Of a stretch of DNA of 64,000 nucleotides, positions 10,149 to 55,067 are shown piece by piece (position 1 is the first letter of the stretch; every line of letters begins with the position of its first letter). The stretch covers positions 1-64,000 of the IMG/VR virus record IMGVR_UViG_3300035698_035310; one strand, 5' to 3'. Under the pieces are notes generated by a model, which was not told the DNA's origin, did not search any database, and was given only the letters and a program-made list of their open reading frames with translations. The position numbers and the translations under genes are program-made.

Positions 10149-10285
10149 CATTGCTGCGTAGTTATTGGTTACTTCGATATAAAACAGCAAAGACATGGTG
10201 GAAATCCATGACGGTAGGGGAAACCCAACTATGAGAATTGCGCTATACTGATTGTTGACAAAACTGTTTTTTTAAGTGGCGAATG
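10149..10285 (+). ncRNA. Y-RNA-like element 1 (with T-loop arm)
   Basis: GCGTAG-N6-GTTACTTCG; catgg-TGGAAAT-ccatg arm; weaker end pairing. Confidence 0.5.
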
Positions 10286-10734: not shown

Positions 10735-10799
10735 TGCCGTTGCGTAGAGATAAGATACTTCGATTGATGAAAACAGCTTATTTCGTTACTTTCTCGGCG
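10735..10799 (+). ncRNA. Y-RNA-like element 2 (short)
   Basis: GCGTAG-N6-GATACTTCG; gagataag/cttatttc and tgccg/cggcg helices. Confidence 0.65.
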
Positions 10800-11192: not shown

Positions 11193-11945
11193 ATGTCAAA
11201 ATTTAACAACGCTGGCGTTGCACCAATCAATGTAACTACAATTCCAAATACACGCACCAAAGAAGGTTCACGATCATTTAAGTTTGATCATAAAATGGAA
11301 CTATATCAAACGGTAGTTACTACACTGTTTGGTGAAAGTAATTTTTATGAAAGCAAAGATGAACGCACCAGTCGTATTACACGTCTTGTTCGCAAGTGTG
11401 TAGAAGGCGGCGATGCACAATATGTTGCTAACCTTGCAGTATATGCTCGTGAGAAAATGTATCTTCGTTCTATTCCTGTATTTTTAACCGTTACACTTGC
11501 AAAAGAAATTCGCGCAGTTGATAGTTCCGACTACAACGTTCGATTATTGACAGGTCGTGTTATTCAACGTGCAGATGAAATTCGTGAAATGTTCGCTGCT
11601 GCGGAAGCAGTATTTGGTAATTCAAAGGATAATAAAACATTTAAGAAAGTTGTACCACGTGCGCTTCTTAAAGGTATCGCTGATTCGTTTAATAAATTTG
11701 ACGCTTACCAATTCAAAAAATGGTCCGGTGGAAAAGGTTCAATTAAATTCACCGACGTAATGCGCGTTGTTCATCCAACACCAAAGGATGAAGCACAGAA
11801 CGCAATCTTTAAGAACATCATGGAAGACACCTTGCCAGCAATCGATACTTGGGAAACCAATATCTCTGGTGATGGTTCTAATACAGAAAACTGGCAGTTA
11901 GTTGCTGATGCCAAAATAGAAAAAACTGCTTGGATTAGGGTATAA
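11193..11945 (+). CDS. rsr: TROVE/Ro60 RNA-binding protein, N-terminal half
   Basis: FGESNFYE, YAREKMYLRSIP, QRADEI, FDAYQFKKW, DVMRVVHPTP, TWET. Confidence 0.88.
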   Translation: MSKFNNAGVAPINVTTIPNTRTKEGSRSFKFDHKMELYQTVVTTLFGESNFYESKDERTSRITRLVRKCVEGGDAQYVANLAVYAREKMYLRSIPVFLTVTLAKEIRAVDSSDYNVRLLTGRVIQRADEIREMFAAAEAVFGNSKDNKTFKKVVPRALLKGIADSFNKFDAYQFKKWSGGKGSIKFTDVMRVVHPTPKDEAQNAIFKNIMEDTLPAIDTWETNISGDGSNTENWQLVADAKIEKTAWIRV

Positions 11946-11964
11946 TCAGTTATATTTTTGTTTC

Positions 11965-12016
11965 TTTACTGCTTTATTGATAAATAGATATAACAGGTTA
12001 TCATAAAGGCGGTAAA
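11965..12016 (+). promoter_or_regulatory. Late promoter GATAAATA (11979-11986) with RBS-sequestering hairpin for the endonuclease
   Basis: tttactgctttattgataa / ttatcataaaggcggtaaa; same logic as T4 I-TevI control. Confidence 0.7.
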
Positions 12017-12019
12017 AAC

Positions 12020-12973
12020 ATGAAGACAATAAAAGAATGGATTGAATGCAATCTTATAAAAGAAAATGGTTCATTGAATGAACGACGAATGGGAAAGTTG
12101 TCCAAAAAAGATAGTAGAACGTGGGTGGAAAAACATCATATCGATAGATTTGATGTTATAATAAAATGGGGAAATGGAAGGTCGTTTAAAGAATGCGTCT
12201 ATATGATATTACAAAATATAATAAACATACCATCATGTAAGATATGTGATAATGATGTAGCATTTATAGATAATAAAAATGGTTATAGATTATATTGTTC
12301 AACTGTATGTATGAATAATGACCCAGAAAGAATAATAGAAATAGAAAAAACTAAAAGATCAAATGGTTCATATGATCAAAAAAGAAAACGATTAGAAGAA
12401 ACTAATATAAAAAAATATGGAAAACCGTTTTTTGTTAATAGAAAAAAAGGAAAAGACACATTAAGAAAAAACTTTGGCGTTGATCATCCGGCACAATCGT
12501 CTATCGTTAAAAAGAAAATGAAAGATACAATGGTTAAAAAATGGGGCGTAGAAAATCCCATGTATATATCAACTTTTGTTGATAAAATGATACAAAGTAG
12601 AGGAAATAAAATAACCGGAAGTATCAGGTGTAGAATAAAACGATTTGGTGATAAAGAGATTCCATATCAAGGAACATATGAAAAAATATTTTTAGAAAGT
12701 TTATCGAATAAAAATATCGAACGAATAAAAAGAGGTAATAAAGCAGTTTATTTTATAGACGGGAAACAAAAAACATATTATCCAGATTTTGTTATAGAAA
12801 ACACAGTTTATGAAATAAAATCGAAATGGACGTGGGATAATAAAGGTAAGAATAAAAGATTAAGAGTAATAAACAAGTTGAAGTTGAGATCGGCTAAACG
12901 GCAAGGTCATAATGTCATTTTGGTATTAGATCATAAACAGTTAACTTACAACGAAGCAATACGCTTGTTATAA
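12020..12973 (+). mobile_element. Free-standing homing endonuclease (PD-(D/E)XK, TnsA-like C-terminus) inserted in the TROVE gene
   Basis: CKIC, YCSTVC, KKWGVENP-type repeats, YYPDFVIENTVYEIKS. Confidence 0.8.
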
Positions 12974-12987
12974 AGGAGACCAAACCA

Positions 12988-13983
12988 ATGCAAGTTATAG
13001 ATAAGAAATTTTTAAAAGATAAAGATAATGTTGTATTCACAGATGAATTTGATATTATTAATGGTGTAAAATACCAAAAAGTTAAATGGGATATAGAGCA
13101 TCCAAAAATGGGTCTGATGGCAAGAGTTCGAAATCTTCGTAATTTAACCAAGCATGATGTTGATTTGGATTACACTATAAAATGTTTGACTGATGCTAAC
13201 GCAGTCAAAAAATCAAAGATGCTCCCGTTTCGCTGGTATTCGGCGTATAGAGAACTTGGTGGTTCTGGAATAGAAGCAAACAATCATTGGTATTATAAAG
13301 AACCAGCTAAACCAGACGTTATGGCTTCACCACATTTGTTGGCTGCATTGGAAGATGCATTTGACATGAGTGTATCCAATTTGCCAGACTTGGGCGATGA
13401 TGTACTTATCGTAGTTGACCAAAGTGGTTCTATGTAAGACACTATCAGCCAACATAGCACAGTAACATGTGCTGAAATCGCTAGTGTGCTTGGTGCTGCG
13501 GTGTGGTTCAATCAGATTCGCCAAGGTAAAAAAGCTATGGTAGCAGGTTTTGCATCCACTGGAAAGGTTTACAATTGGAGTGCACGAACTAGTGCGCTTG
13601 CTGCGGCTAAAGAAATGATGAACACCAGTTTGGGTGGTGCAACGAATATCGGCACTGCGTGGGGTGCTGCAAAAATGGCTAATCTTAAACCATCAACTAT
13701 TGTGGTTCTTAGTGATATGCAAATGACTGGCGATAGCCGCGCTCGTTATAATACAATTATGGTTCCAGAGCAATACGGTCTTGCTGATGATGACACTTTG
13801 AAAATAAGTATCAACATTAAAGGTTATGATAATAGCCCGTTGGCTATGAACAATGGCTGGATTCAAATTGCTGGATGGTCAGAAAAAATATTTGATCTTA
13901 TTGACGCAATGCGCAAACCAGGTGATGCTGTTAAGTTGATTAATGATCTTGATTTAAACTTGACAAAGTCGCAACAGGTATAG
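12988..13983 (+). pseudogene. rsr: TROVE/Ro60 C-terminal half incl. vWA domain, with in-frame TAA at 13435-13437
   Basis: KMGLMARVRNLRNL, SKMLPFRWYSAY, VDQSGSM*DTISQHSTVTCAEIASVLGAA, GGATNI, LSDMQ, GWSEKIF. Confidence 0.8.
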
Positions 13984-14019: not shown

Positions 14020-14538
14020 TTGTTGAACAATAATACTACTTTGCTTAATGAGCAAATAAATTTACATTTGATTCGTTTAGTCAGTGATGACGGTGAACAG
14101 GATGGAATAATGACATCCAGTGCAGCGTATACTATAGCGCAATCGAAAGGATTGGATTTAGTTTTAATATCACCCGAAGCAATTCCACCTGTATGTAAGG
14201 TGCTTAATTGGGGCAAACATTTATTTGATTTAAAGAAACGACAAAAAGAATCTAAATCAAAACAAACCGTAGTTGATACAAAAGAAGTTCAATTAAGACC
14301 AACTACTGATGTTCATGATTTGGAAACAAAAATGAATAAAGCAAAGAAGTTTTTAGAGAAAGGCAAACATGTTCGTTTTCATATGCGTTTCCGTGGACGA
14401 GAAGCATCACATGCTGAAATAGGCATGGAAATGATGAATGGCATCCTTGAAACGTTAGGAGATACTGTTGTTATTGACAAGAAACCCATATTAAAAGGTA
14501 AGAATATCATAATGTTAGTGGCTCCAGCGACTAAATAG
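14020..14538 (+). CDS. infC: Translation initiation factor IF-3 (TTG start)
   Basis: LNEQI, GLDLVLISP...PPVCKV, VKEVQLRP-like segment, FLEKG, FRGRE. Confidence 0.95.
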   Translation: MLNNNTTLLNEQINLHLIRLVSDDGEQDGIMTSSAAYTIAQSKGLDLVLISPEAIPPVCKVLNWGKHLFDLKKRQKESKSKQTVVDTKEVQLRPTTDVHDLETKMNKAKKFLEKGKHVRFHMRFRGREASHAEIGMEMMNGILETLGDTVVIDKKPILKGKNIIMLVAPATK

Positions 14539-17996: not shown

Positions 17997-18400
17997 ATAT
18001 TGTATGGTGTAGTGGTAACACGCTGCCTTTATCGGCGGAGCCGTGGGTTCGAGTCCTACTATGATATTTGGATTACGTTCAGTGTGCACACCGAACGCCA
18101 CAAATTATCTGTTATTATCGCGATAGTGATAGATAATGTTGGGTCACTTAGTTATGATTAAAGTTTTTAGGGTGTTCGTCTAGTGGATTAGGACGCGCCG
18201 CCTTGGGTAGTTGGAGTTCGATTCTCCTTAGCAACGGTTACGTAAATCCGCACGGTGAGACATTGGTTCGAATCCAATACATGTTAAAATAACGATTTCA
18301 CATGAGATGTATAGTTTTAATGGATAAATCAGGCATGAGCCTTGTGCGGCAAGATAGTGGGTTCGATTCCCCTTGCGTTGAATGTGAAATGATGCTATAT
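17997..18400 (+). ncRNA. Degenerate tRNA-like elements (17997-18068, ~18169-18285, ~18295-18390)
   Basis: Four GGTTCGA/GAGTTCGA T-arms and D-arm-like segments but defective anticodon or acceptor arms. Confidence 0.55.
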
Positions 18401-23683: not shown

Positions 23684-23769
23684 TCGGATATAGGAGAATT
23701 GGTAGACCCAGAAGATTGTTAATCTTCCGCAGCAATGCATTCCAGGTTCGAGTCCTGGTATCCGAGCCA
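23684..23769 (+). tRNA. tRNA-Asn(GTT) with long variable arm
   Basis: gaaga-ttGTTaa-tcttc; gca-gcaa-tgc V arm; GCCA. Confidence 0.8.
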
Positions 23770-23770
23770 A

Positions 23771-23908
23771 TAACACCGTAGCGTAGAAAATAGTTACTTC
23801 GTTTCACTCACGACTGGAATGGGTTCGATTCCCATGCCCTGCGTAAGCAGGGTTTAGTGTAATGGTAGCACAGTATATCTCTATTTTCGTTTTTTACTCG
23901 GTGTTGTT
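23771..23908 (+). ncRNA. yrlA: YrlA-class Y RNA (tRNA-mimic)
   Basis: taacaccg/cggtgttg and gaaaatag/ctattttc end helices enclosing T-arm (atggg-ttcgatt-cccat), loop-closed acceptor (ccctgc-gtaa-gcaggg) and D-arm in permuted order. Confidence 0.8.
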
Positions 23909-24287: not shown

Positions 24288-24444
<157 letters not shown>

Positions 24445-26994: not shown

Positions 26995-27110
26995 ATTATG
27001 ACATGATAGTTTAAACAGCTTATTAAATCCATGGATTGTGAGCAAAAGTAGAACATGCCCGTATTCGGGGCAAGATGAGGTGAAATGCCTTGAATGTCGC
27101 CAAGTTTAAT

Positions 27111-27184
27111 GCGGGTATCGTATAATGGAATTACTACACATTGCCTATGTGTAGACGGGGGTTCGATTCCCCCTACCCGCTCCA
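27111..27184 (+). tRNA. tRNA-Gly(GCC)
   Basis: acaca-ttGCCta-tgtgt; TCCA. Confidence 0.88.
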
Positions 27185-27196
27185 ATAAATAGAAAT

Positions 27197-27451
27197 ATGA
27201 ACAGAGAAACATTTGCCAATGCGTTAGAATACTATAGAAATATCAATATCCCACATGGATTTGATACGTGGGCTTATTTTGATGATATGCCGCCTGTTTT
27301 AAAGGAACGTGTTCGTGAATCGATGTCAAATAGAAATAGTGTAGCCATACATCAGATATTCAATGACGATGGCATGGAAGTGGCTATTGCAGTTCTAAAT
27401 TTTTTAGACGAAACTGAAAAAGCGCAATATTATAAAACATACGACGATTAA
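27197..27451 (+). CDS. Hypothetical protein
   Basis: 84-aa ORF between tRNAs. Confidence 0.55.
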   Translation: MNRETFANALEYYRNINIPHGFDTWAYFDDMPPVLKERVRESMSNRNSVAIHQIFNDDGMEVAIAVLNFLDETEKAQYYKTYDD

Positions 27452-27454
27452 TAT

Positions 27455-27541
27455 AGAAGTACTTTGTATTGGTGAACTCAGCAGTCTCCAAAACTGTGTC
27501 GCATTTGTGACTGGTAGGTTCGAATCCTACTACTTCTGCCA
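27455..27541 (+). tRNA. tRNA-Trp(CCA) with long variable arm
   Basis: gcagt-ctCCAaa-actgt; gtcgc-attt-gtgac V arm; GCCA. Confidence 0.8.
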
Positions 27542-27596
27542 ATTTAACTCCCCATGATAAATATCATTTGTGACATAACGCGAATGGGGTAATATC

Positions 27597-27929
27597 ATGA
27601 TGGACGATGATACAAAAAACAGGTTCATAAAAACATTCAGTGATTATATCACAATGATTAAAGGCAAGCATGAATGTGCAAGACTTGTTGATATTAAAAT
27701 GATGGATTTATATACAATTGCGCCACATATATGCATTGTAGATATAGAACATCCATCGTTACGAAAGAAAATTATATTTTTTGGAACACAATTGGTATTA
27801 AACGCTAATGCTGATTTAACTGGAACATACCTCGACTATGATGAATTAAACATTGATGATATATCCTTTCCATTATATGGTGATGGTGATATTATTGATC
27901 ACATTATAAGTGTTTCATTCAAAAATTAA
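27597..27929 (+). CDS. PAS-like domain protein
   Basis: L...APHICIVDI...FFGT.L...ADLTG.YLD pattern. Confidence 0.55.
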   Translation: MMDDDTKNRFIKTFSDYITMIKGKHECARLVDIKMMDLYTIAPHICIVDIEHPSLRKKIIFFGTQLVLNANADLTGTYLDYDELNIDDISFPLYGDGDIIDHIISVSFKN

Positions 27930-27932
27930 TAT

Positions 27933-28003
27933 ACCTCCGCTGATGGTTCAGACATAAGCTTGCGAAGCTTGTTGGGAAAGTTCGATTCTTTTCGGGGGTT
28001 CCA
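27933..28003 (+). tRNA. tRNA-Arg(GCG)
   Basis: taagc-ttGCGaa-gcttg; short D arm; TCCA. Confidence 0.75.
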
Positions 28004-28004
28004 A

Positions 28005-28150
28005 TATTGTTATAGCTATGGAAATTAGTTCCTTCTTATCCCAACCTGTAGGTCGTAGGTTCGAATCCTGCTCCTCGCGCCAATTATGCGGGGATAGCTC
28101 AGTGGTAGAGCAACTGGCAATTTTACTGGTTCCAATTATTATAGCAATAT
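28005..28150 (+). ncRNA. Circularly permuted tRNA-like RNA / YrlA variant
   Basis: 3' tRNA half with GCCA, linker attat, then 5' half, all inside atattgttata/tatagcaatat stem; CTATGG-N6-GTTCCTTC variant motif. Confidence 0.75.
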
Positions 28151-28165
28151 TTTATTAAATAGGTC

Positions 28166-28360
28166 ATGAACAAGTATGACACGGCGTATAGAAATCGCAT
28201 TGCTGCCCAACGCAAACAGTGGGCAAACAATACGAAACAGCGTTTGTGGAATAAACGAATAAAGATATTGTATATTGCATGTGTATGTATTATAATCTCT
28301 TTATCGGTTGCGGCAGAAGTATTTGGATATTTAAATATAATATTTGGTTTTTTGTTGTAA
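28166..28360 (+). CDS. Small membrane protein
   Basis: C-terminal hydrophobic helices. Confidence 0.5.
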   Translation: MNKYDTAYRNRIAAQRKQWANNTKQRLWNKRIKILYIACVCIIISLSVAAEVFGYLNIIFGFLL

Positions 28361-28368
28361 CATGATAT

Positions 28369-28446
28369 TGACTAGTAGCTCAGTGGTTTAGAGCGGGGAG
28401 TTCTAAACTCTCGACAGCGTTGGTTCAAATCCAACCTGGTCAACCA
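28369..28446 (+). tRNA. Amber suppressor tRNA (CTA)
   Basis: gggag-ttCTAaa-ctctc; intact cloverleaf; ACCA. Confidence 0.85.
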
Positions 28447-28453
28447 ATACTAA

Positions 28454-28625
28454 GCGGGTATCGTATAATGGTATTATCGCAGCCTTCCATGTGATATGTT
28501 TAACATATCTCAGGTTGAGCCATTTATTGGCTCCTTGAAGGTCGAGGGTTCAGACCCCATCCGGTTTAAGCCCGGTAGACCAACTTAAGCTGATGACGGG
28601 AGTTCGATTCTCCCTACCCGCTCCA
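28454..28625 (+). tRNA. tRNA-Gly(TCC) with 98-nt intron at 37/38 (28490-28587)
   Basis: 5' exon ends cagc-ctTCCa; 3' exon a-gctga...TCCA; exons make a standard Gly cloverleaf. Confidence 0.85.
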
Positions 28626-28629
28626 ATAT

Positions 28630-29421
28630 TTGATAAATAGTTATATGAAATGTAAACAATGTAAAATATCATTTACCCCTATCCCACAAGCAAAAAAAGG
28701 TATATTTTGTTCGCACGATTGTCATAATGTATACCAGCGCGTAAATACTCGTGAGCAATACTTAAAAAATCCCAAACGGTGTATTTTTTGTGATGATATA
28801 ATATCATATAGAGAAAATATAAAAGTGGCGAAGTTTTGCAATAGGTCTTGCGGGGCAAAATATAATAATAAAAGACGTACAGAATGCGGATACACCCCAA
28901 GTCATAAAAAATGGTCTAGTGGTAAAATATCTGCTAAAATGTCATCAAAAATGCGCCGTGCGGATATCAAATCAAGTGTCGTGTTTGGTGATTTTACTAT
29001 AATAACATTTGCTATATGCAATATTACGAATAAACCATATGTTCTACAAACACCGCATGGTGGTATAAAGCAAATATCACCATATATTAAATCATCTAAA
29101 CAGATATATTATGAGCAAGCCAAATTTCGATTTAATGTATATGACTATCCAGATATATTTGATATAACACTTTTAGAAAAATATGGATGGTATACATGTC
29201 CCGGCAAGAAACGAAAAAATCAAAAAAAGAATATAAATGGTGTAAGTAGAGATCATATAATATCTATCAATGATGGATTTAAGAATGGGTATGATCCATA
29301 TATTTTAGCACATCCTGCTAATTGTCGATTGATTAAACAAGTGGATAATGTTAAAAAATTAGATAAATCTAATATGTCATATGACGAGTTATTGATTAAC
29401 ATAAAACAATGGAATGGATAG
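28630..29421 (+). mobile_element. Free-standing HNH-type endonuclease copy 4 (probable start ATG 28646)
   Basis: GATAAATA at 28633; CKQC, FCSHDC, FCNRSC; KFRFNVYDYP...GVSRDH...HPANC. Confidence 0.75.
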
Positions 29422-29428
29422 ACTATTC

Positions 29429-29503
29429 GCCCCTATAGTACAATGGTTAATATGATCGCCCGGTAAGCGATAGATGAAAGTTCGATTCTTTCTAGAGGCA
29501 CCA
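29429..29503 (+). tRNA. tRNA-Thr(GGT)
   Basis: atcgc-ccGGTaa-gcgat; ACCA. Confidence 0.88.
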
Positions 29504-29515
29504 ATAAATAACAAT

Positions 29516-30331
29516 ATGACAATGACACCACCAAATATTATAATTTATAGTAATCCACGTTCAGGAACCACATTGCTTCATCATACATTATTATTATTTT
29601 TTCAAGAATATTATGGTGATTATTATTGTGATTTACATGAATTCTTTACAACATCGCATATGACAACGAGACATCGTAATAATATAGATGAAATAAATTC
29701 CATTACGTATGAACAGAATAACAATATATTAATAAAGACATACAAGCCAGCAGATACCGAAAGCAATGACTTCGAAGAAGAATTGCAACAACGAATTTCA
29801 CAATGGAACAATTGTGTAATAGCTGATAACAATCAGCCGTTTATAACAAAAATATTTCACAAAAATTTGATTGATCACAATTTTTCAAATACAATATTTG
29901 ATCATTCATTAAATTTGGTTCTTGTAAGAAAAAACGTACAAGATATGATATTGAGTTTTATAATATCAAATAGCAACAATAACTGGTTTTATTATGAAAA
30001 TGAAAATATAGAAACATTGCGCGGAAGTTTGATTGGTGATATAGATATAATACGCATTCATTTGGAACGCAATAAATTATTTCTTGAAAATATACCCAAT
30101 ATACCCAATGCATTAATCATTGATTATGATGAACTTAATGACTATGAATATTTTTATCAAGTTATTATAGATATGGGCATTGTTGATATTCGTGAATTGC
30201 ATGCCATGGAAATATTTGATAACATACAGCTAAAACGTAAAATTATTCCAACACCATATACAATGGATCGTATAGATTATTTTAAGAATGCCAATGAAAT
30301 AAAAACACTCATGGATGAATATTGTTCTTGA
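29516..30331 (+). CDS. Sulfotransferase-like protein (start ATG 29516)
   Basis: IIIYSNPRSGTTLL PAPS loop; LVLVRKN....LS; IDYDEL. Confidence 0.7.
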   Translation: MTMTPPNIIIYSNPRSGTTLLHHTLLLFFQEYYGDYYCDLHEFFTTSHMTTRHRNNIDEINSITYEQNNNILIKTYKPADTESNDFEEELQQRISQWNNCVIADNNQPFITKIFHKNLIDHNFSNTIFDHSLNLVLVRKNVQDMILSFIISNSNNNWFYYENENIETLRGSLIGDIDIIRIHLERNKLFLENIPNIPNALIIDYDELNDYEYFYQVIIDMGIVDIRELHAMEIFDNIQLKRKIIPTPYTMDRIDYFKNANEIKTLMDEYCS

Positions 30332-54041: not shown

Positions 54042-55067
54042 TTGAAAATGTTATTAGAACGTGATAAATTTAGAGAAGGTGTGTTTGAACGCGATAGTCA
54101 TAAGTGCGTCATGTGTGATGCACCTGCTCAAGATGCTCATCACATCATTGAACGTAGGCTCTTTACGGATGGTGGCTATTACTTAGATAATGGGTCTAGC
54201 CTGTGTGGTGAACATCATTTAGCAGCCGAATATACAACGCTTTCGCCACAAGAAATTCGTGAAAAAATAGGCATCACTAAAGTCGTATTACCAGAGCATT
54301 TATACCGCGATCAAGAGTATGACAAATGGGGCAACCCTATGTTACCTAACGGCACACGCCTTAAGGGTGATTTGTTTGATGATTTGTCGGTTCAGAAAGC
54401 ATTAAAGGCTGGTGGCGTTTTGGGAAGTTTTACGCACTTAGTGAAATATCCAAGAACATATCATGTAATGTGGAGTCCCGGTTTAAGTAATGATGACCGT
54501 GCGCATAACTCATTGGATCAGTTTGAAGGAAAAAATGTTGTCGTCCATTTGAAGATGGACGGTGAAAACGCAAGTTTTTATAATGATCATTATCACGCAC
54601 GTTCGTTAGATACTGTTAATCATCCATCTCGCAAATGGGCTAAAATGCTTCATGCGCGTATTATGGGTGATATACCAGAAAGCTGGCGTGTGTGTGCTGA
54701 GAATTTGTATGCTGAACATTCGATTCATTATGACGATCTTGAAGCCTTCGTTCTTGCTTTTTCTATATGGAATGAAAAAAATGAATGCCTTGGTTGGGAT
54801 GAAACCCAAGATTGGTTTGAGTTGTTAGAAGTTCCACAAGTTCCAGTTTTGTATGAAGGATTATTTTCAGAAGAAAAGTTGCATGAAATTGAATCAACGC
54901 TTGATTTTGAAATTGATGAAGGATATGTGATGAGAACGCGAGATAGTTTCCATTATAATGACTTTCGGCAAAATGTCGCTAAATATGTTCGTAAAGGGCA
55001 TGTTCAACATTCAACCGAAGGACACTGGATCAATCGACCAATTACGCCTAATGAACTGAGAAAATAA
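54042..55067 (+). CDS. HNH domain-RNA ligase (Rnl2-like nucleotidyltransferase) fusion
   Basis: CVMC...DAHHI...N..LC..HH; KYPRTYH, KMDGEN, AEN, EGYVMR, KYVR. Confidence 0.85.
   Translation: MKMLLERDKFREGVFERDSHKCVMCDAPAQDAHHIIERRLFTDGGYYLDNGSSLCGEHHLAAEYTTLSPQEIREKIGITKVVLPEHLYRDQEYDKWGNPMLPNGTRLKGDLFDDLSVQKALKAGGVLGSFTHLVKYPRTYHVMWSPGLSNDDRAHNSLDQFEGKNVVVHLKMDGENASFYNDHYHARSLDTVNHPSRKWAKMLHARIMGDIPESWRVCAENLYAEHSIHYDDLEAFVLAFSIWNEKNECLGWDETQDWFELLEVPQVPVLYEGLFSEEKLHEIESTLDFEIDEGYVMRTRDSFHYNDFRQNVAKYVRKGHVQHSTEGHWINRPITPNELRK

What the first reader, a model, noticed from the sequence alone, without database searches (positions are those of the whole stretch)
28005..28150. Permuted tRNA that still carries CCA and a complete Gly(CCC) anticodon arm across the break
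Seen: order is tCCCaa-cctgt-aggtc-T-arm-tcctcgc-GCCA, linker attat, gcgggga-D-arm-actgg-c. Joining the final c (position 32) to tcccaa (33-38) rebuilds actgg-ctCCCaa-cctgt. G1:C72, C2:G71, G3:C70 fit Gly identity, but G73 does not. The whole is clamped by the Y-RNA-type stem. Established: permuted tRNA genes are known in some algae and archaea; YrlA has this topology. Inference: either an evolutionary intermediate from tandem tRNAs to Y RNA, or a ligase-dependent source of a GGG-reading tRNA; the attenuator leader contains two GGG codons.
Basis: partly seen in the sequence, partly recalled or inferred. Interest (0 to 1): 0.7.

Follow-up and report, generated by a model that had tools for sequence, protein, structure and literature searches.

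The report
Phage permuted tRNA mimic (YrlA-type)
A jumbo phage from a salt lake carries, inside its tRNA gene cluster, a small RNA gene built from two partial copies of a glycine tRNA that fold together into one tRNA-shaped body; it is an unusually tRNA-like relative of the known bacterial and phage "Y RNAs" and probably not a hidden decoding tRNA.

Summary
The order is anticodon-loop remnant, V loop, T arm, 3' acceptor strand, G73, CCA, 5-nt spacer, 5' acceptor strand, D arm, 5' anticodon-stem strand. A roughly 23-bp stem closes the whole.

Rejoined, ARAGORN calls it tRNA-Gly(CCC), with a U.U mismatch in the anticodon stem. Rfam's YrlA model matches only the T/acceptor/D core (32.4 bits, gathering score 69).

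The window is the start of a 359-kb jumbo phage. That phage encodes a split Ro60 gene and four RNAs carrying the phage Y-RNA motif GCGTAG...TTACTTCG. The target lacks that motif, but it aligns collinearly (78% over 82 nt) with a motif-bearing YrlA unit beside Ro60 in another jumbo phage.

Permuted modules with the same "7-bp acceptor + NCCA + spacer" recur in at least 16 other viral records. Six of those records are at least 93% complete and have no Ro60.

Most likely it is a YrlA-family mimic derived from a tRNA dimer, cut by RNase P into a two-piece RNA with a free CCA end. Both the dimer origin and the RNase P/CCA behaviour are already published. Maturation into a GGG-reading tRNA is unsupported. 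No RNA data exist.

The parts
27933..28003 (+). Context: a weak tRNA-like gene (Arg GCG-type loop, short D arm) whose encoded CCA ends at 28003. That position is also the first base of the target's closing stem.
   Evidence: Rfam tRNA 24.7 bits, below the gathering score of 29; sequence read.
28003..28029 (+). 5' strand of the closing stem: 13 bp, then 5 bp, then 5 bp, with an internal loop CTA and a bulged A at 28024. It aligns with the Y-RNA motif region of canonical units, but the motif itself is not kept (TAGCTATGG in place of (C)AGCGTAG).
   Evidence: Folds; alignments.
28030..28044 (+). Pyrimidine-rich single strand. GTTCCTTCT (28028-36) is the diverged counterpart of the motif G(T/A)TACTTCG. 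ATCCCAA (28038-44) is a 7-nt anticodon-loop remnant: A32, U33, CCC, A37, A38.
   Evidence: The format TAT-NNN-AA-CC is shared with G024 unit B (GAA) and L063 (ACC).
28045..28054 (+). 3' strand of the anticodon stem (CCTGT) plus the 5-nt variable loop AGGTC. C48 can form the Levitt pair with G15.
28055..28071 (+). T arm: GTAGG / TTCGAAT / CCTGC.
   Evidence: Rfam YrlA alignment; ARAGORN.
28072..28087 (+). 3' acceptor strand TCCTCGC, discriminator G73, encoded CCA (28080-82) and spacer ATTAT. Together these form the 9-nt loop of the acceptor hairpin.
   Evidence: In this phage, 31 of 32 ARAGORN-called tRNA genes end in an encoded CCA followed by an A/T-rich spacer, and two real tRNAs have ATTAT as their 5' leader.
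28088..28118 (+). 5' acceptor strand GCGGGGA, U8 A9, D arm, A26, 5' anticodon-stem strand ACTGG, and C. The predicted RNase P site lies between 28087 and 28088.
   Evidence: The exact 25-mer 28088-28112 lies at ARAGORN-called tRNA-Gly(GCC) genes in three of the five cellular genomes that hold it. The RNase P site is an inference.
28119..28151 (+). Loop AATTTT, then the 3' strand of the closing stem (28125-34 and 28139-51). It contains a second CCAATTAT (28132-39) like the one in the acceptor loop.

Best explanation
**What it is.** The element is a gene for a small non-coding RNA of the YrlA (bacterial/phage Y RNA) type: a circularly permuted tRNA mimic that descends from a head-to-tail pair of glycine-type tRNA genes.
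- Copy 1 has lost a working 5' acceptor strand, D arm and 5' anticodon-stem strand. It keeps its anticodon loop, V loop, T arm, 3' acceptor strand, G73 and CCA.
- Copy 2 keeps only its 5' acceptor strand, D arm and 5' anticodon-stem strand.
- The two remnants pair with each other and rebuild one complete L-shaped tRNA core. The leftover flanks pair into a long stem in place of the anticodon arm's end.

**How it is probably made (inferred).** It is transcribed with the surrounding tRNA array and released by the tRNA-processing enzymes. It has every bacterial RNase P determinant: a 7-bp acceptor stacked on a 5-bp T stem, U at -1, and a 3' NCCA. RNase P therefore most likely cuts between 28087 and 28088, and the ATTAT tail is trimmed. 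The product would be a stable two-piece RNA of about 80 + 64 nt with a free CCA end, as shown experimentally for Mycobacterium smegmatis YrlA.

**What it probably does (inferred).** It acts as a tRNA look-alike that engages tRNA-binding proteins within the phage's RNA-repair and RNA-quality-control set (split Ro60, Rnl1- and Rnl2-type ligases). It does not decode. Whether Ro60 itself binds it is doubtful, because the motif shared by the phage's other Y RNAs is absent.
For: **Shown**
- Anatomy and tRNA-core nucleotides.
- It is the best YrlA-model hit in the 359-kb genome: 32.4 bits, against 20.5 bits for a tandem-tRNA junction and 15.4 bits for the phage's own motif-bearing YrlA.
- The phage encodes Ro60/TROVE on the same strand at 11193-13983.
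- It also encodes four RNAs with the motif GCGTAG-N6-G(T/A)TACTTCG, shared with other Ro60 phages.
- The target is 78% identical over 82 nt to YrlA unit B of jumbo phage G024. That unit lies directly downstream of an intact 560-aa Ro60 and carries the motif.
- The alignment with unit B is collinear: GATACTTCG-TATGAAAA-CCTTT-GGGTC against GTTCCTTCT-TATCCCAA-CCTGT-AGGTC.
- The 5' region also aligns without gaps, 16 of 22, with the phage's own YrlA at 23768-23902.
- In the first scan of viral contigs, 12 other viral hits among about 120 show 7/7 acceptor complementarity across an NCCA-spacer junction. The chance rate is about 0.001 per site, and the score distribution is bimodal.
- The second scan added four more distinct elements: L161 (=L187), L171 (=L195), L184 and L194 (=L201). 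The G024/G025 array shows two more units with NCCA loops.
- U at -1 in 10 of 14 spacers.
- Related pairs L105/L133 and L092/L094 have quite different acceptor sequences yet both pair 7/7.
- Compensatory changes at 27:43 and 28:42 of the trans anticodon stem among target, unit B and L063.
- The cut two-piece form is predicted to be stable (-43.7 kcal/mol).

**Published**
- M. smegmatis YrlA has a 7-bp acceptor, is cut by RNase P and gains CCA in vivo (PMC4201824).
- YrlA as a circularly permuted tRNA, and the dimeric-tRNA origin model (bioRxiv 10.1101/312249).
Against: - No transcript data: no RNA run was listed, so expression, ends and RNase P cutting are all inferred.
- The Rfam score is below the gathering threshold.
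- The defining 5' Ro60-binding motif (GNCGAAN0-1G; phage form G(N)CGTAG) is absent.
- The element starts 14 kb downstream of the end of Ro60, not within 4 kb.
- The phage Ro60 gene is split by an inserted ORF and carries an in-frame TAA, so it may not be functional.
- Similar elements occur in complete phage genomes without Ro60. The partner may therefore not be Ro60 at all.
- The fold z-score is only -2.4.
Confidence: 0.65

Rival explanations
1. Ro60-independent tRNA mimic. The element belongs to a wider, undescribed class of phage-encoded, RNase P-processed two-piece tRNA look-alikes with a free CCA end and an exposed anticodon-like triplet. These would work without Ro60, for example as decoys or sponges for host tRNA-targeting defence nucleases or CCA-modifying toxins, or as substrates or cofactors of the phage RNA ligases.
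For: - Six viral records at least 93% complete carry such elements but have no TROVE domain and no relative of a phage Ro60 (G011, G012, G013, G017, G021, G022).
- Many of these share a different 5' motif, (T)ACAGCA, instead of the Y-RNA motif.
- The target itself lacks the Y-RNA motif, while four other RNAs of the same phage have it.
- G026, like this phage, has a motif-bearing closed-loop unit and also a motif-less CCA-junction unit.
- The loop format TAT-NNN-AA is kept while the triplet varies.
- The phage has Rnl1- and Rnl2-type ligases.
Against: - The nearest sequence relative of the target is a motif-bearing unit next to Ro60.
- A phage could use the host's Ro60.
- Absence of Ro60 rests on HMM and protein searches, which score divergent phage Ro60 weakly: this phage's own gene reaches only 20-27 bits.
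- No partner protein, neighbour gene or experiment points to any defence system.
Confidence: 0.2
2. True permuted tRNA gene. The closing stem is cut off, the ends at 28118 and 28039 are ligated (by a phage Rnl1-type ligase), RNase P and 3' trimming open the acceptor, and a working tRNA-Gly(CCC) that reads GGG is produced.
For: - ARAGORN accepts the rejoined sequence as tRNA-Gly(CCC).
- Glycine-type acceptor and D arm.
- CCA is encoded.
- The phage's own Gly tRNAs are both GCC, so no phage tRNA reads GGG.
- The phage encodes a T4 Rnl1-type ligase, the enzyme class that seals anticodon-loop breaks (enzyme role from established knowledge of T4 Rnl1).
- The possibility was raised in print for YrlAs (bioRxiv 10.1101/312249).
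Against: - No bulge-helix-bulge or other defined cut signal: the junction is a 15-nt / 7-nt asymmetric loop.
- No splicing endonuclease and no RtcB in the phage. The host is bacterial, since the phage carries an IF3 gene and its tRNA genes encode CCA.
- U.U mismatch in the anticodon stem.
- G73 instead of the U73 that bacterial GlyRS needs (established knowledge).
- GGG is the rarest Gly codon of the phage: 286 of 4322 Gly codons.
- Homologous units carry other triplets or closed acceptor loops, and they sit in Y-RNA arrays next to Ro60.
Confidence: 0.05
3. Dead remnant: a decaying partial tandem duplication in the tRNA array, or a leftover integration site, with no function of its own.
For: - It lies in a dense tRNA array next to another degenerate tRNA-like sequence (27933-28003, below the Rfam threshold).
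- The first copy is visibly decayed.
- IMG/VR labels the record a provirus.
Against: - Every invariant tRNA-core nucleotide and all 7 acceptor pairs are intact, and the two partial copies complement each other exactly.
- A 23-bp stem closes it.
- Homologues with the same layout occur in other phages, with compensatory changes.
- No tyrosine integrase in the genome. None of the 185,579 representative prokaryotic genomes has the 28-nt stretch (T arm, 3' acceptor strand, G73, CCA; 28055-28082) as an exact match.
- It is not a recent copy of any phage tRNA (at most 55 of 75 identical).
Confidence: 0.1

Closest known systems
YrlA RNAs (Rfam RF02553; Chen et al. 2014, PMC4201824), especially Mycobacterium smegmatis YrlA
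   Same: - Permuted order: T arm, acceptor-like hairpin, D arm.
- tRNA tertiary-pair nucleotides are kept.
- The 5' and 3' ends pair in a stem that replaces the end of the anticodon arm.
- It is encoded in a genome with Ro60, on the same strand.
- Like the M. smegmatis RNA, it has a 7-bp acceptor (the RNase P determinant). The expected two halves are about 80 and 64 nt, against 82 and 65 nt in M. smegmatis.
   Different: - CCA is fully encoded and followed by a spacer typical of this phage's tRNA junctions; M. smegmatis gains CA after cutting.
- The variable region is a plain 5-nt tRNA V loop, preceded by a recognisable 7-nt anticodon loop.
- No GNCGAAN0-1G / GCGTAG motif.
- The element starts 14 kb beyond the end of Ro60.
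- Rfam score 32.4 bits against a threshold of 69.
Motif-bearing YrlA arrays next to Ro60 in jumbo phages G024/G025 (IMG/VR; L224, L194, found here)
   Same: - 78% identity over the core.
- Same trans anticodon stem.
- Same TAT-NNN-AA format.
- 7-bp acceptor with an NCCA + TTTAT/GTAT-type spacer.
   Different: Those units begin with GCAGCAGCGTAG-N6-GATACTTCG and lie within about 1-2 kb of an intact Ro60. The target has lost the motif and sits in the tRNA array.
Circularly permuted tRNA genes (Cyanidioschyzon merolae and other algae; Thermofilum pendens)
   Same: The 3' half lies upstream of the 5' half. The acceptor is first closed by a linker, and the termini pair next to the anticodon region.
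   Different: Those genes have a bulge-helix-bulge cut by the splicing endonuclease, and they yield proven mature tRNAs through a circular intermediate. Here there is no such motif or enzyme, and the stem is mismatched.
Two-piece (permuted) tmRNA
   Same: Permuted tRNA-like domain: T arm, 3' acceptor strand and CCA lie upstream of the 5' acceptor strand, and the intervening loop is removed by tRNA-processing enzymes.
   Different: No tag reading frame or pseudoknots. G3:C70 rather than the G3:U70 alanine identity pair. ARAGORN finds no tmRNA.

Membership tests
YrlA (bacterial/phage Y RNA, RF02553) | T arm, acceptor-like stem-loop and D arm in that order, with the tRNA tertiary-interaction nucleotides | tested here: met
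   The Rfam alignment covers model positions 24-84. U8, A14, G15:C48, G18G19 and T54/A58 were read in the sequence. ARAGORN gives a cloverleaf after re-permutation.
YrlA (bacterial/phage Y RNA, RF02553) | Score at or above Rfam's gathering threshold (69 bits) | tested here: not met
   32.4 bits. The threshold is a poor guide here: the phage's own motif-bearing YrlA (23768-23902) scores only 15.4 bits.
YrlA (bacterial/phage Y RNA, RF02553) | 5' motif GNCGAAN0-1G thought to contact Ro60 (in these phages G(N)CGTAG-N6-7-G(T/A)TACTTCG) | tested here: not met
   Pattern searches and alignments. The target has TAGCTATGG...GTTCCTTCT at the aligned positions; only the second half is recognisably related.
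YrlA (bacterial/phage Y RNA, RF02553) | Encoded within about 4 kb of Ro60 on the same strand | tested here: not met
   Same strand, but Ro60 is at 11193-13983 and the element starts at 28003. The tRNA / Y-RNA island lies in between.
YrlA (bacterial/phage Y RNA, RF02553) | Sequence homology to RNAs that meet the other criteria | tested here: met
   78% over 82 nt, and a collinear alignment, with G024 unit B next to Ro60. 16 of 22 ungapped matches with the phage's own YrlA 5' region.
YrlA (bacterial/phage Y RNA, RF02553) | Bound by Ro60/Rsr in vivo | not testable with these tools
   Needs immunoprecipitation or a gel-shift assay.
Circularly permuted tRNA gene | 3' half upstream of 5' half, which rebuild a full cloverleaf when joined | tested here: met
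   ARAGORN calls tRNA-Gly(CCC) on the join, with one U.U mismatch in the anticodon stem.
Circularly permuted tRNA gene | Bulge-helix-bulge at the termini, plus a splicing endonuclease and ligase to make a circular intermediate | tested here: not met
   The folds show a 15-nt / 7-nt asymmetric loop, not a bulge-helix-bulge. No tRNA_int_endo and no RtcB in the phage. Rnl1- and Rnl2-type ligases are present.
Circularly permuted tRNA gene | Mature contiguous tRNA detected | not testable with these tools
   No RNA run was listed for this sequence.
Bacterial tRNA-Gly | G1:C72, C2:G71, G3:C70, C35, C36 and U73 | tested here: not met
   The first three pairs and CCC are present, but the discriminator is G73. 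The identity set is from established knowledge of E. coli GlyRS.
Two-piece tmRNA | G3:U70, tag reading frame, pseudoknots | tested here: not met
   G3:C70. ARAGORN's tmRNA search of the genome found none. The Rfam tmRNA families gave no hit in the window.

The most novel reading that the evidence does not exclude
The element and its relatives form an undescribed, Ro60-independent class. These are phage tRNA-array genes for RNase P-processed, two-piece tRNA surrogates with a free CCA end and an exposed, variable anticodon-like triplet. They would be used to decoy or titrate host tRNA-targeting defences or tRNA-binding enzymes, or be sealed and charged in special conditions. The class is widespread in phages that have no Ro60.
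Probability: 0.2. Interest if true: 0.8.

Novelty: new variant of a known kind. Interest (0 to 1): 0.5.

Why it matters
**A living intermediate for the origin of YrlA.** YrlA RNAs are proposed to have arisen from dimeric tRNA transcripts, but the sources read here offer no intermediate form as direct support. This element looks like one. Both tRNA copies are still recognisable, and the acceptor loop is still a normal CCA-spacer-G1 junction of the host phage's own tRNA array. The anticodon loop of the first copy survives. Motif-bearing relatives beside Ro60 in other jumbo phages show the next stage.

**A second documented case of processing, if confirmed.** RNase P cutting would extend the single M. 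smegmatis example of a nicked, CCA-ended Y RNA to phages.

**A question about the partner protein.** The same layout appears in complete phage genomes without Ro60. This raises a testable question: do tRNA-shaped RNAs of this kind have a job of their own in phage-host conflicts over tRNA?

Tried and rejected
- **Phage GenBank records:** megablast of 27000-30000 found nothing.
- **IMG/VR exact pattern:** a search for the target's own junction found nothing.
- **Neighbouring ORF 28630-29421:** no relatives in viral contigs, so no synteny could be used.
- **Sequencing runs:** only DNA runs from salt-lake metagenomes hold the sequence, and no RNA run was listed. Laying contigs of four other runs gave identical low-depth pieces plus unrelated tRNAs, so there was no variation, no joints and no ends to use.
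- **Integration site (attP):** rejected. No tyrosine integrase, and no cellular tRNA with this 3' end.
- **tmRNA:** rejected.
- **Recent copy of a phage tRNA:** rejected, at most 73% identity.
- **Rfam families over the related viral elements:** none at gathering score.
- **Two reviews not held:** Sim & Wolin 2018 and Sim et al. 2020. The dimeric-tRNA model is therefore cited second-hand from bioRxiv 10.1101/312249.
- **Custom covariance model:** not built. The counts of NCCA loops come largely from scans that required CCA, so they are not frequencies.
not examined.

Full report
**Setting**

The window is the first 64 kb of a 359,044-bp IMG/VR virus record, estimated 94% complete. It is AT-rich (34-39% G+C) and comes from salt-lake metagenomes.

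Between about 18 and 49 kb it holds 28 ARAGORN tRNA genes, all on the + strand. All but one of the 32 tRNA genes in the genome encode CCA followed by an A/T-rich spacer. Most are preceded by ..AT. The 5-nt leader ATTAT occurs before two real tRNAs, and a 5-nt spacer (ATTAA) separates two tRNA-Asp genes.

**The observation**

Read base by base, the element has this order:
- T-CCC-AA (28039-44) and CCTGT (28045-49)
- V loop AGGTC (28050-54)
- T arm (28055-71)
- TCCTCGC (28072-78), G73, and CCA (28080-82)
- spacer ATTAT (28083-87)
- GCGGGGA (28088-94), TA, and D arm (28097-111)
- A, ACTGG (28113-17), and C (28118)

The acceptor strands pair 7/7. The tRNA tertiary set is complete: U8, A14, G15:C48, G18G19, T54, C56, A58. 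A stem of 13 + 5 + 5 bp joins 28003-29 to 28125-51.

Rfam's YrlA model matches 28048-28114 (model positions 24-84) at 32.4 bits, E 5e-6 for the whole genome. The next hits are a tandem-tRNA junction at 20.5 bits and the phage's own canonical YrlA at 15.4 bits. So the feature is real and is not a chance match.

- The anticodon stem has a central U.U mismatch.
- A full 7-nt loop, ATCCCAA (28038-44), already lies in cis in the first copy.
- The stem lacks the Y-RNA motif (see below).

**Ro60 and the phage's other Y RNAs**

A TROVE/Ro60 gene lies at 11193-13983 on the same strand. Against an intact 560-aa Ro60 of another jumbo phage, it forms three collinear pieces:
- 11193-11945;
- an inserted 317-aa ORF (DUF7487) at 12020-12973, then 12988-13437 with its own ribosome-binding site identical to that of the first piece;
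- a single in-frame TAA inside the DQSGSM motif, then open frame to 13983.

Ro60-encoding viral contigs carry several RNAs each. These RNAs share a strongly conserved 5' motif, G(N)CGTA(G/A)-N6-7-G(T/A)TACTTCG, often followed by T arm, acceptor hairpin and D arm.

This phage has four such motifs:
- 10154-76 and 10743-62, just upstream of Ro60;
- 23780-801, a full YrlA at 23768-23902 with a 6-bp acceptor and GTAA loop;
- 24371-90.

The target has none.

**Homology**

DNA search of other viral records found an 82-nt match of 78% identity in G024 (358 kb) and G025. That match is unit B of an array of YrlA units lying directly downstream of an intact Ro60. Unit B has the canonical motif, a 7-bp acceptor and the loop A-CCA-TTTAT.

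The alignment is collinear:

| | motif region | loop remnant | AC 3' strand | V loop |
|---|---|---|---|---|
| Unit B | GATACTTCG | TATGAAAA | CCTTT | GGGTC |
| Target | GTTCCTTCT | TATCCCAA | CCTGT | AGGTC |

The target's 5' region also aligns without gaps, 16 of 22, with the phage's own YrlA. The target is therefore a diverged member of the same lineage. It has kept the second half of the motif in degenerate form and lost the GCGTAG half.

**Anticodon features**

Among permuted modules in hand, two layouts occur.

The first has a complete anticodon-type hairpin in cis, with a 5-bp stem and a 7-nt loop. This is what Chen et al. called the V arm. Examples:
- CTTCCAT in G025 unit 2, which also has U73-CCA;
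- CTATTAA and CTTTGGA in other units;
- CTCGTAA in L019, which ARAGORN even calls a tRNA.

The second has a trans stem between the strand 5' of the V loop and the strand after the D arm. Target, unit B and L063 are of this trans type. All three share TAT-NNN-AA-CC on the 5' side and one nucleotide plus an A-rich run on the 3' side. The triplets are CCC, GAA and ACC. Pairs 27:43 and 28:42 change in a compensatory way.

The glycine character is real. The 25-mer 28088-28112 occurs in five cellular genomes; ARAGORN calls tRNA-Gly(GCC) at three, one match is cut by the locus end, and the other lies in a YrlA-like module of an Obscuribacterales MAG.

**A wider class**

Two scans of IMG/VR contribute here:

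- A scan for T loop-N11-CCA-N2-14-N7-D arm gave about 120 junctions. Their acceptor complementarity is bimodal, and 13, the target's own match among them (so 12 other viral hits), pair 7/7. All 7/7 cases lack complete flanking tRNAs.
- A second scan added four more distinct elements, among them the G024/G025 units.

Every member shares these features:
- The elements lie in phage tRNA arrays, and no Rfam family covers them at threshold.
- Spacers end in T at -1 in 10 of 14.
- Of 20 records tested, only G019 and G026 have TROVE or a relative of phage Ro60. Six records at least 93% complete have none.
- Many Ro60-less members share a different 5' motif, (T)ACAGCA.
- These counts are biased, because the scans required CCA.

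**Mechanism**

The published precedent is M. smegmatis YrlA (PMC4201824). Its 7-bp acceptor makes it an RNase P substrate in vitro. In vivo it exists as 82-nt and 65-nt halves, the first ending in CCA.

The target has the same determinants, plus an encoded NCCA and U at -1. Its cut form is predicted to be stable (-43.7 kcal/mol). I therefore infer RNase P cutting at 28087/28088 and a two-piece RNA of 80 + 64 nt.

No promoter or terminator stands out, which fits co-transcription with the array. The upstream tRNA-like gene ends in CCA at 28003, exactly where the stem begins.

None of this is shown by RNA data. No RNA run was listed.

**Rivals**

*A decoding tRNA made by cutting and ligation is unlikely.*
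- There is no bulge-helix-bulge, no splicing endonuclease and no RtcB.
- The host is bacterial, since the phage carries an IF3 gene.
- The stem is mismatched, and G73 is the wrong discriminator.
- GGG is the rarest Gly codon.
- The phage does have Rnl1- and Rnl2-type ligases.

*A dead remnant or integration site is unlikely.*
- The core is intact, and homologues exist.
- There is no integrase and no matching cellular tRNA.

*A Ro60-independent role remains open.* It is the most novel reading.

**Comparison with the literature**

These points are already published:
- YrlAs are circularly permuted tRNA mimics.
- They may derive from dimeric tRNA transcripts.
- Some might be processed towards tRNAs (bioRxiv 10.1101/312249, Discussion).
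- Phages, jumbo phages included, carry Ro60 and Y RNAs (PMC4201824, PMC12135203, PMC7824862).

What looks new here:
- a YrlA relative that is still visibly a tRNA-Gly dimer, with an encoded CCA-spacer junction and an anticodon-loop remnant;
- the loss of the Ro60 motif in that relative;
- the same layout recurring in Ro60-less phages.

**Verdict:** a new variant of a known kind, of moderate interest.

Noticed in passing
window 11193-13983 (+): The phage Ro60 (TROVE + vWA) gene is in three collinear pieces: 11193-11945, then 12988-13437, then open frame to 13983. A 317-aa ORF (12020-12973, DUF7487, homing-endonuclease-like) sits between pieces 1 and 2. Piece 2 has its own ribosome-binding site, GGAGACCAAACCATG, identical to that of piece 1. 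A single in-frame TAA (13438-40) follows DQSGSM. It could be a split but working gene, a pseudogene or read-through; this was not resolved.
   Followed up: partly
window 10154-10176, 10743-10762, 23768-23902, 24371-24390 (+): Four RNAs carry the phage Y-RNA motif GCGTAG-N6-G(T/A)TACTTCG. Two lie just upstream of Ro60. One is a full YrlA (6-bp acceptor, GTAA loop) right after tRNA-Asn. One has no tRNA module and lies between tRNA-Gly and tRNA-Trp. None reaches Rfam's YrlA threshold.
   Followed up: partly
window 27933-28003 (+): A degenerate tRNA-like gene (Arg GCG-type loop, short D arm, encoded CCA) that ARAGORN missed. Rfam tRNA gives 24.7 bits, below the gathering score of 29.
   Followed up: no
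window 28369-28446, genome 221822-221895, window 17997-18068: Two tRNAs have a CTA anticodon (amber-suppressor type; ARAGORN labels them Pyl). One odd tRNA has a 6- or 8-nt anticodon loop, TTTATC. TAG still ends 23 of 221 long ORFs (TAA 151, TGA 47), so the genome gives no clear sign of a changed genetic code.
   Followed up: partly
window 54534-54989; genome 336541-337155 and 326676-326996: Rnl2-type and T4 Rnl1-type RNA ligase genes, three matches in all. The phage has no RtcB, no CCA-adding enzyme and no tyrosine integrase. An IF3 homologue lies at 14020-14538, right after Ro60.
   Followed up: no
L224:1300-1700 and L194 (G024/G025, IMG/VR jumbo phages): An array of at least five tandem YrlA units lies directly downstream of an intact Ro60. 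Each unit starts with GCAGCAGCGTAG. Acceptor loops are either closed (GAAT) or tRNA-junction-like (T-CCA-GTAT, A-CCA-TTTAT, and a degenerate A-CTA-TGGT). Several units have complete anticodon-type hairpins in cis, for example CTTCCAT.
   Followed up: partly
L062, L063, L092, L102, L132, L134, L144, L150, L152, L212: Permuted tRNA-like elements in phages without detectable Ro60 share a 5' motif, (T)ACAGCA, in an internal loop just inside the closing stem. This may be the binding site of an unknown partner. No Rfam family covers these elements.
   Followed up: partly
L231:7440-7600 (-), Candidatus Obscuribacterales MAG: A bacterial YrlA-like module has the same acceptor 5' strand and D arm as the target (GCGGGGA...), the loop TCTAC, and a cis anticodon-type hairpin CTGTTAA. 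No TROVE domain was found in that MAG; its completeness is unknown.
   Followed up: partly
L063:2958-3395 (-); L092:6232-6558 (-); L082:2896-3185 (-): The tRNA arrays of these phages also hold a GOLLD RNA and permuted (two-piece) tmRNA genes close to the permuted tRNA-like elements.
   Followed up: no
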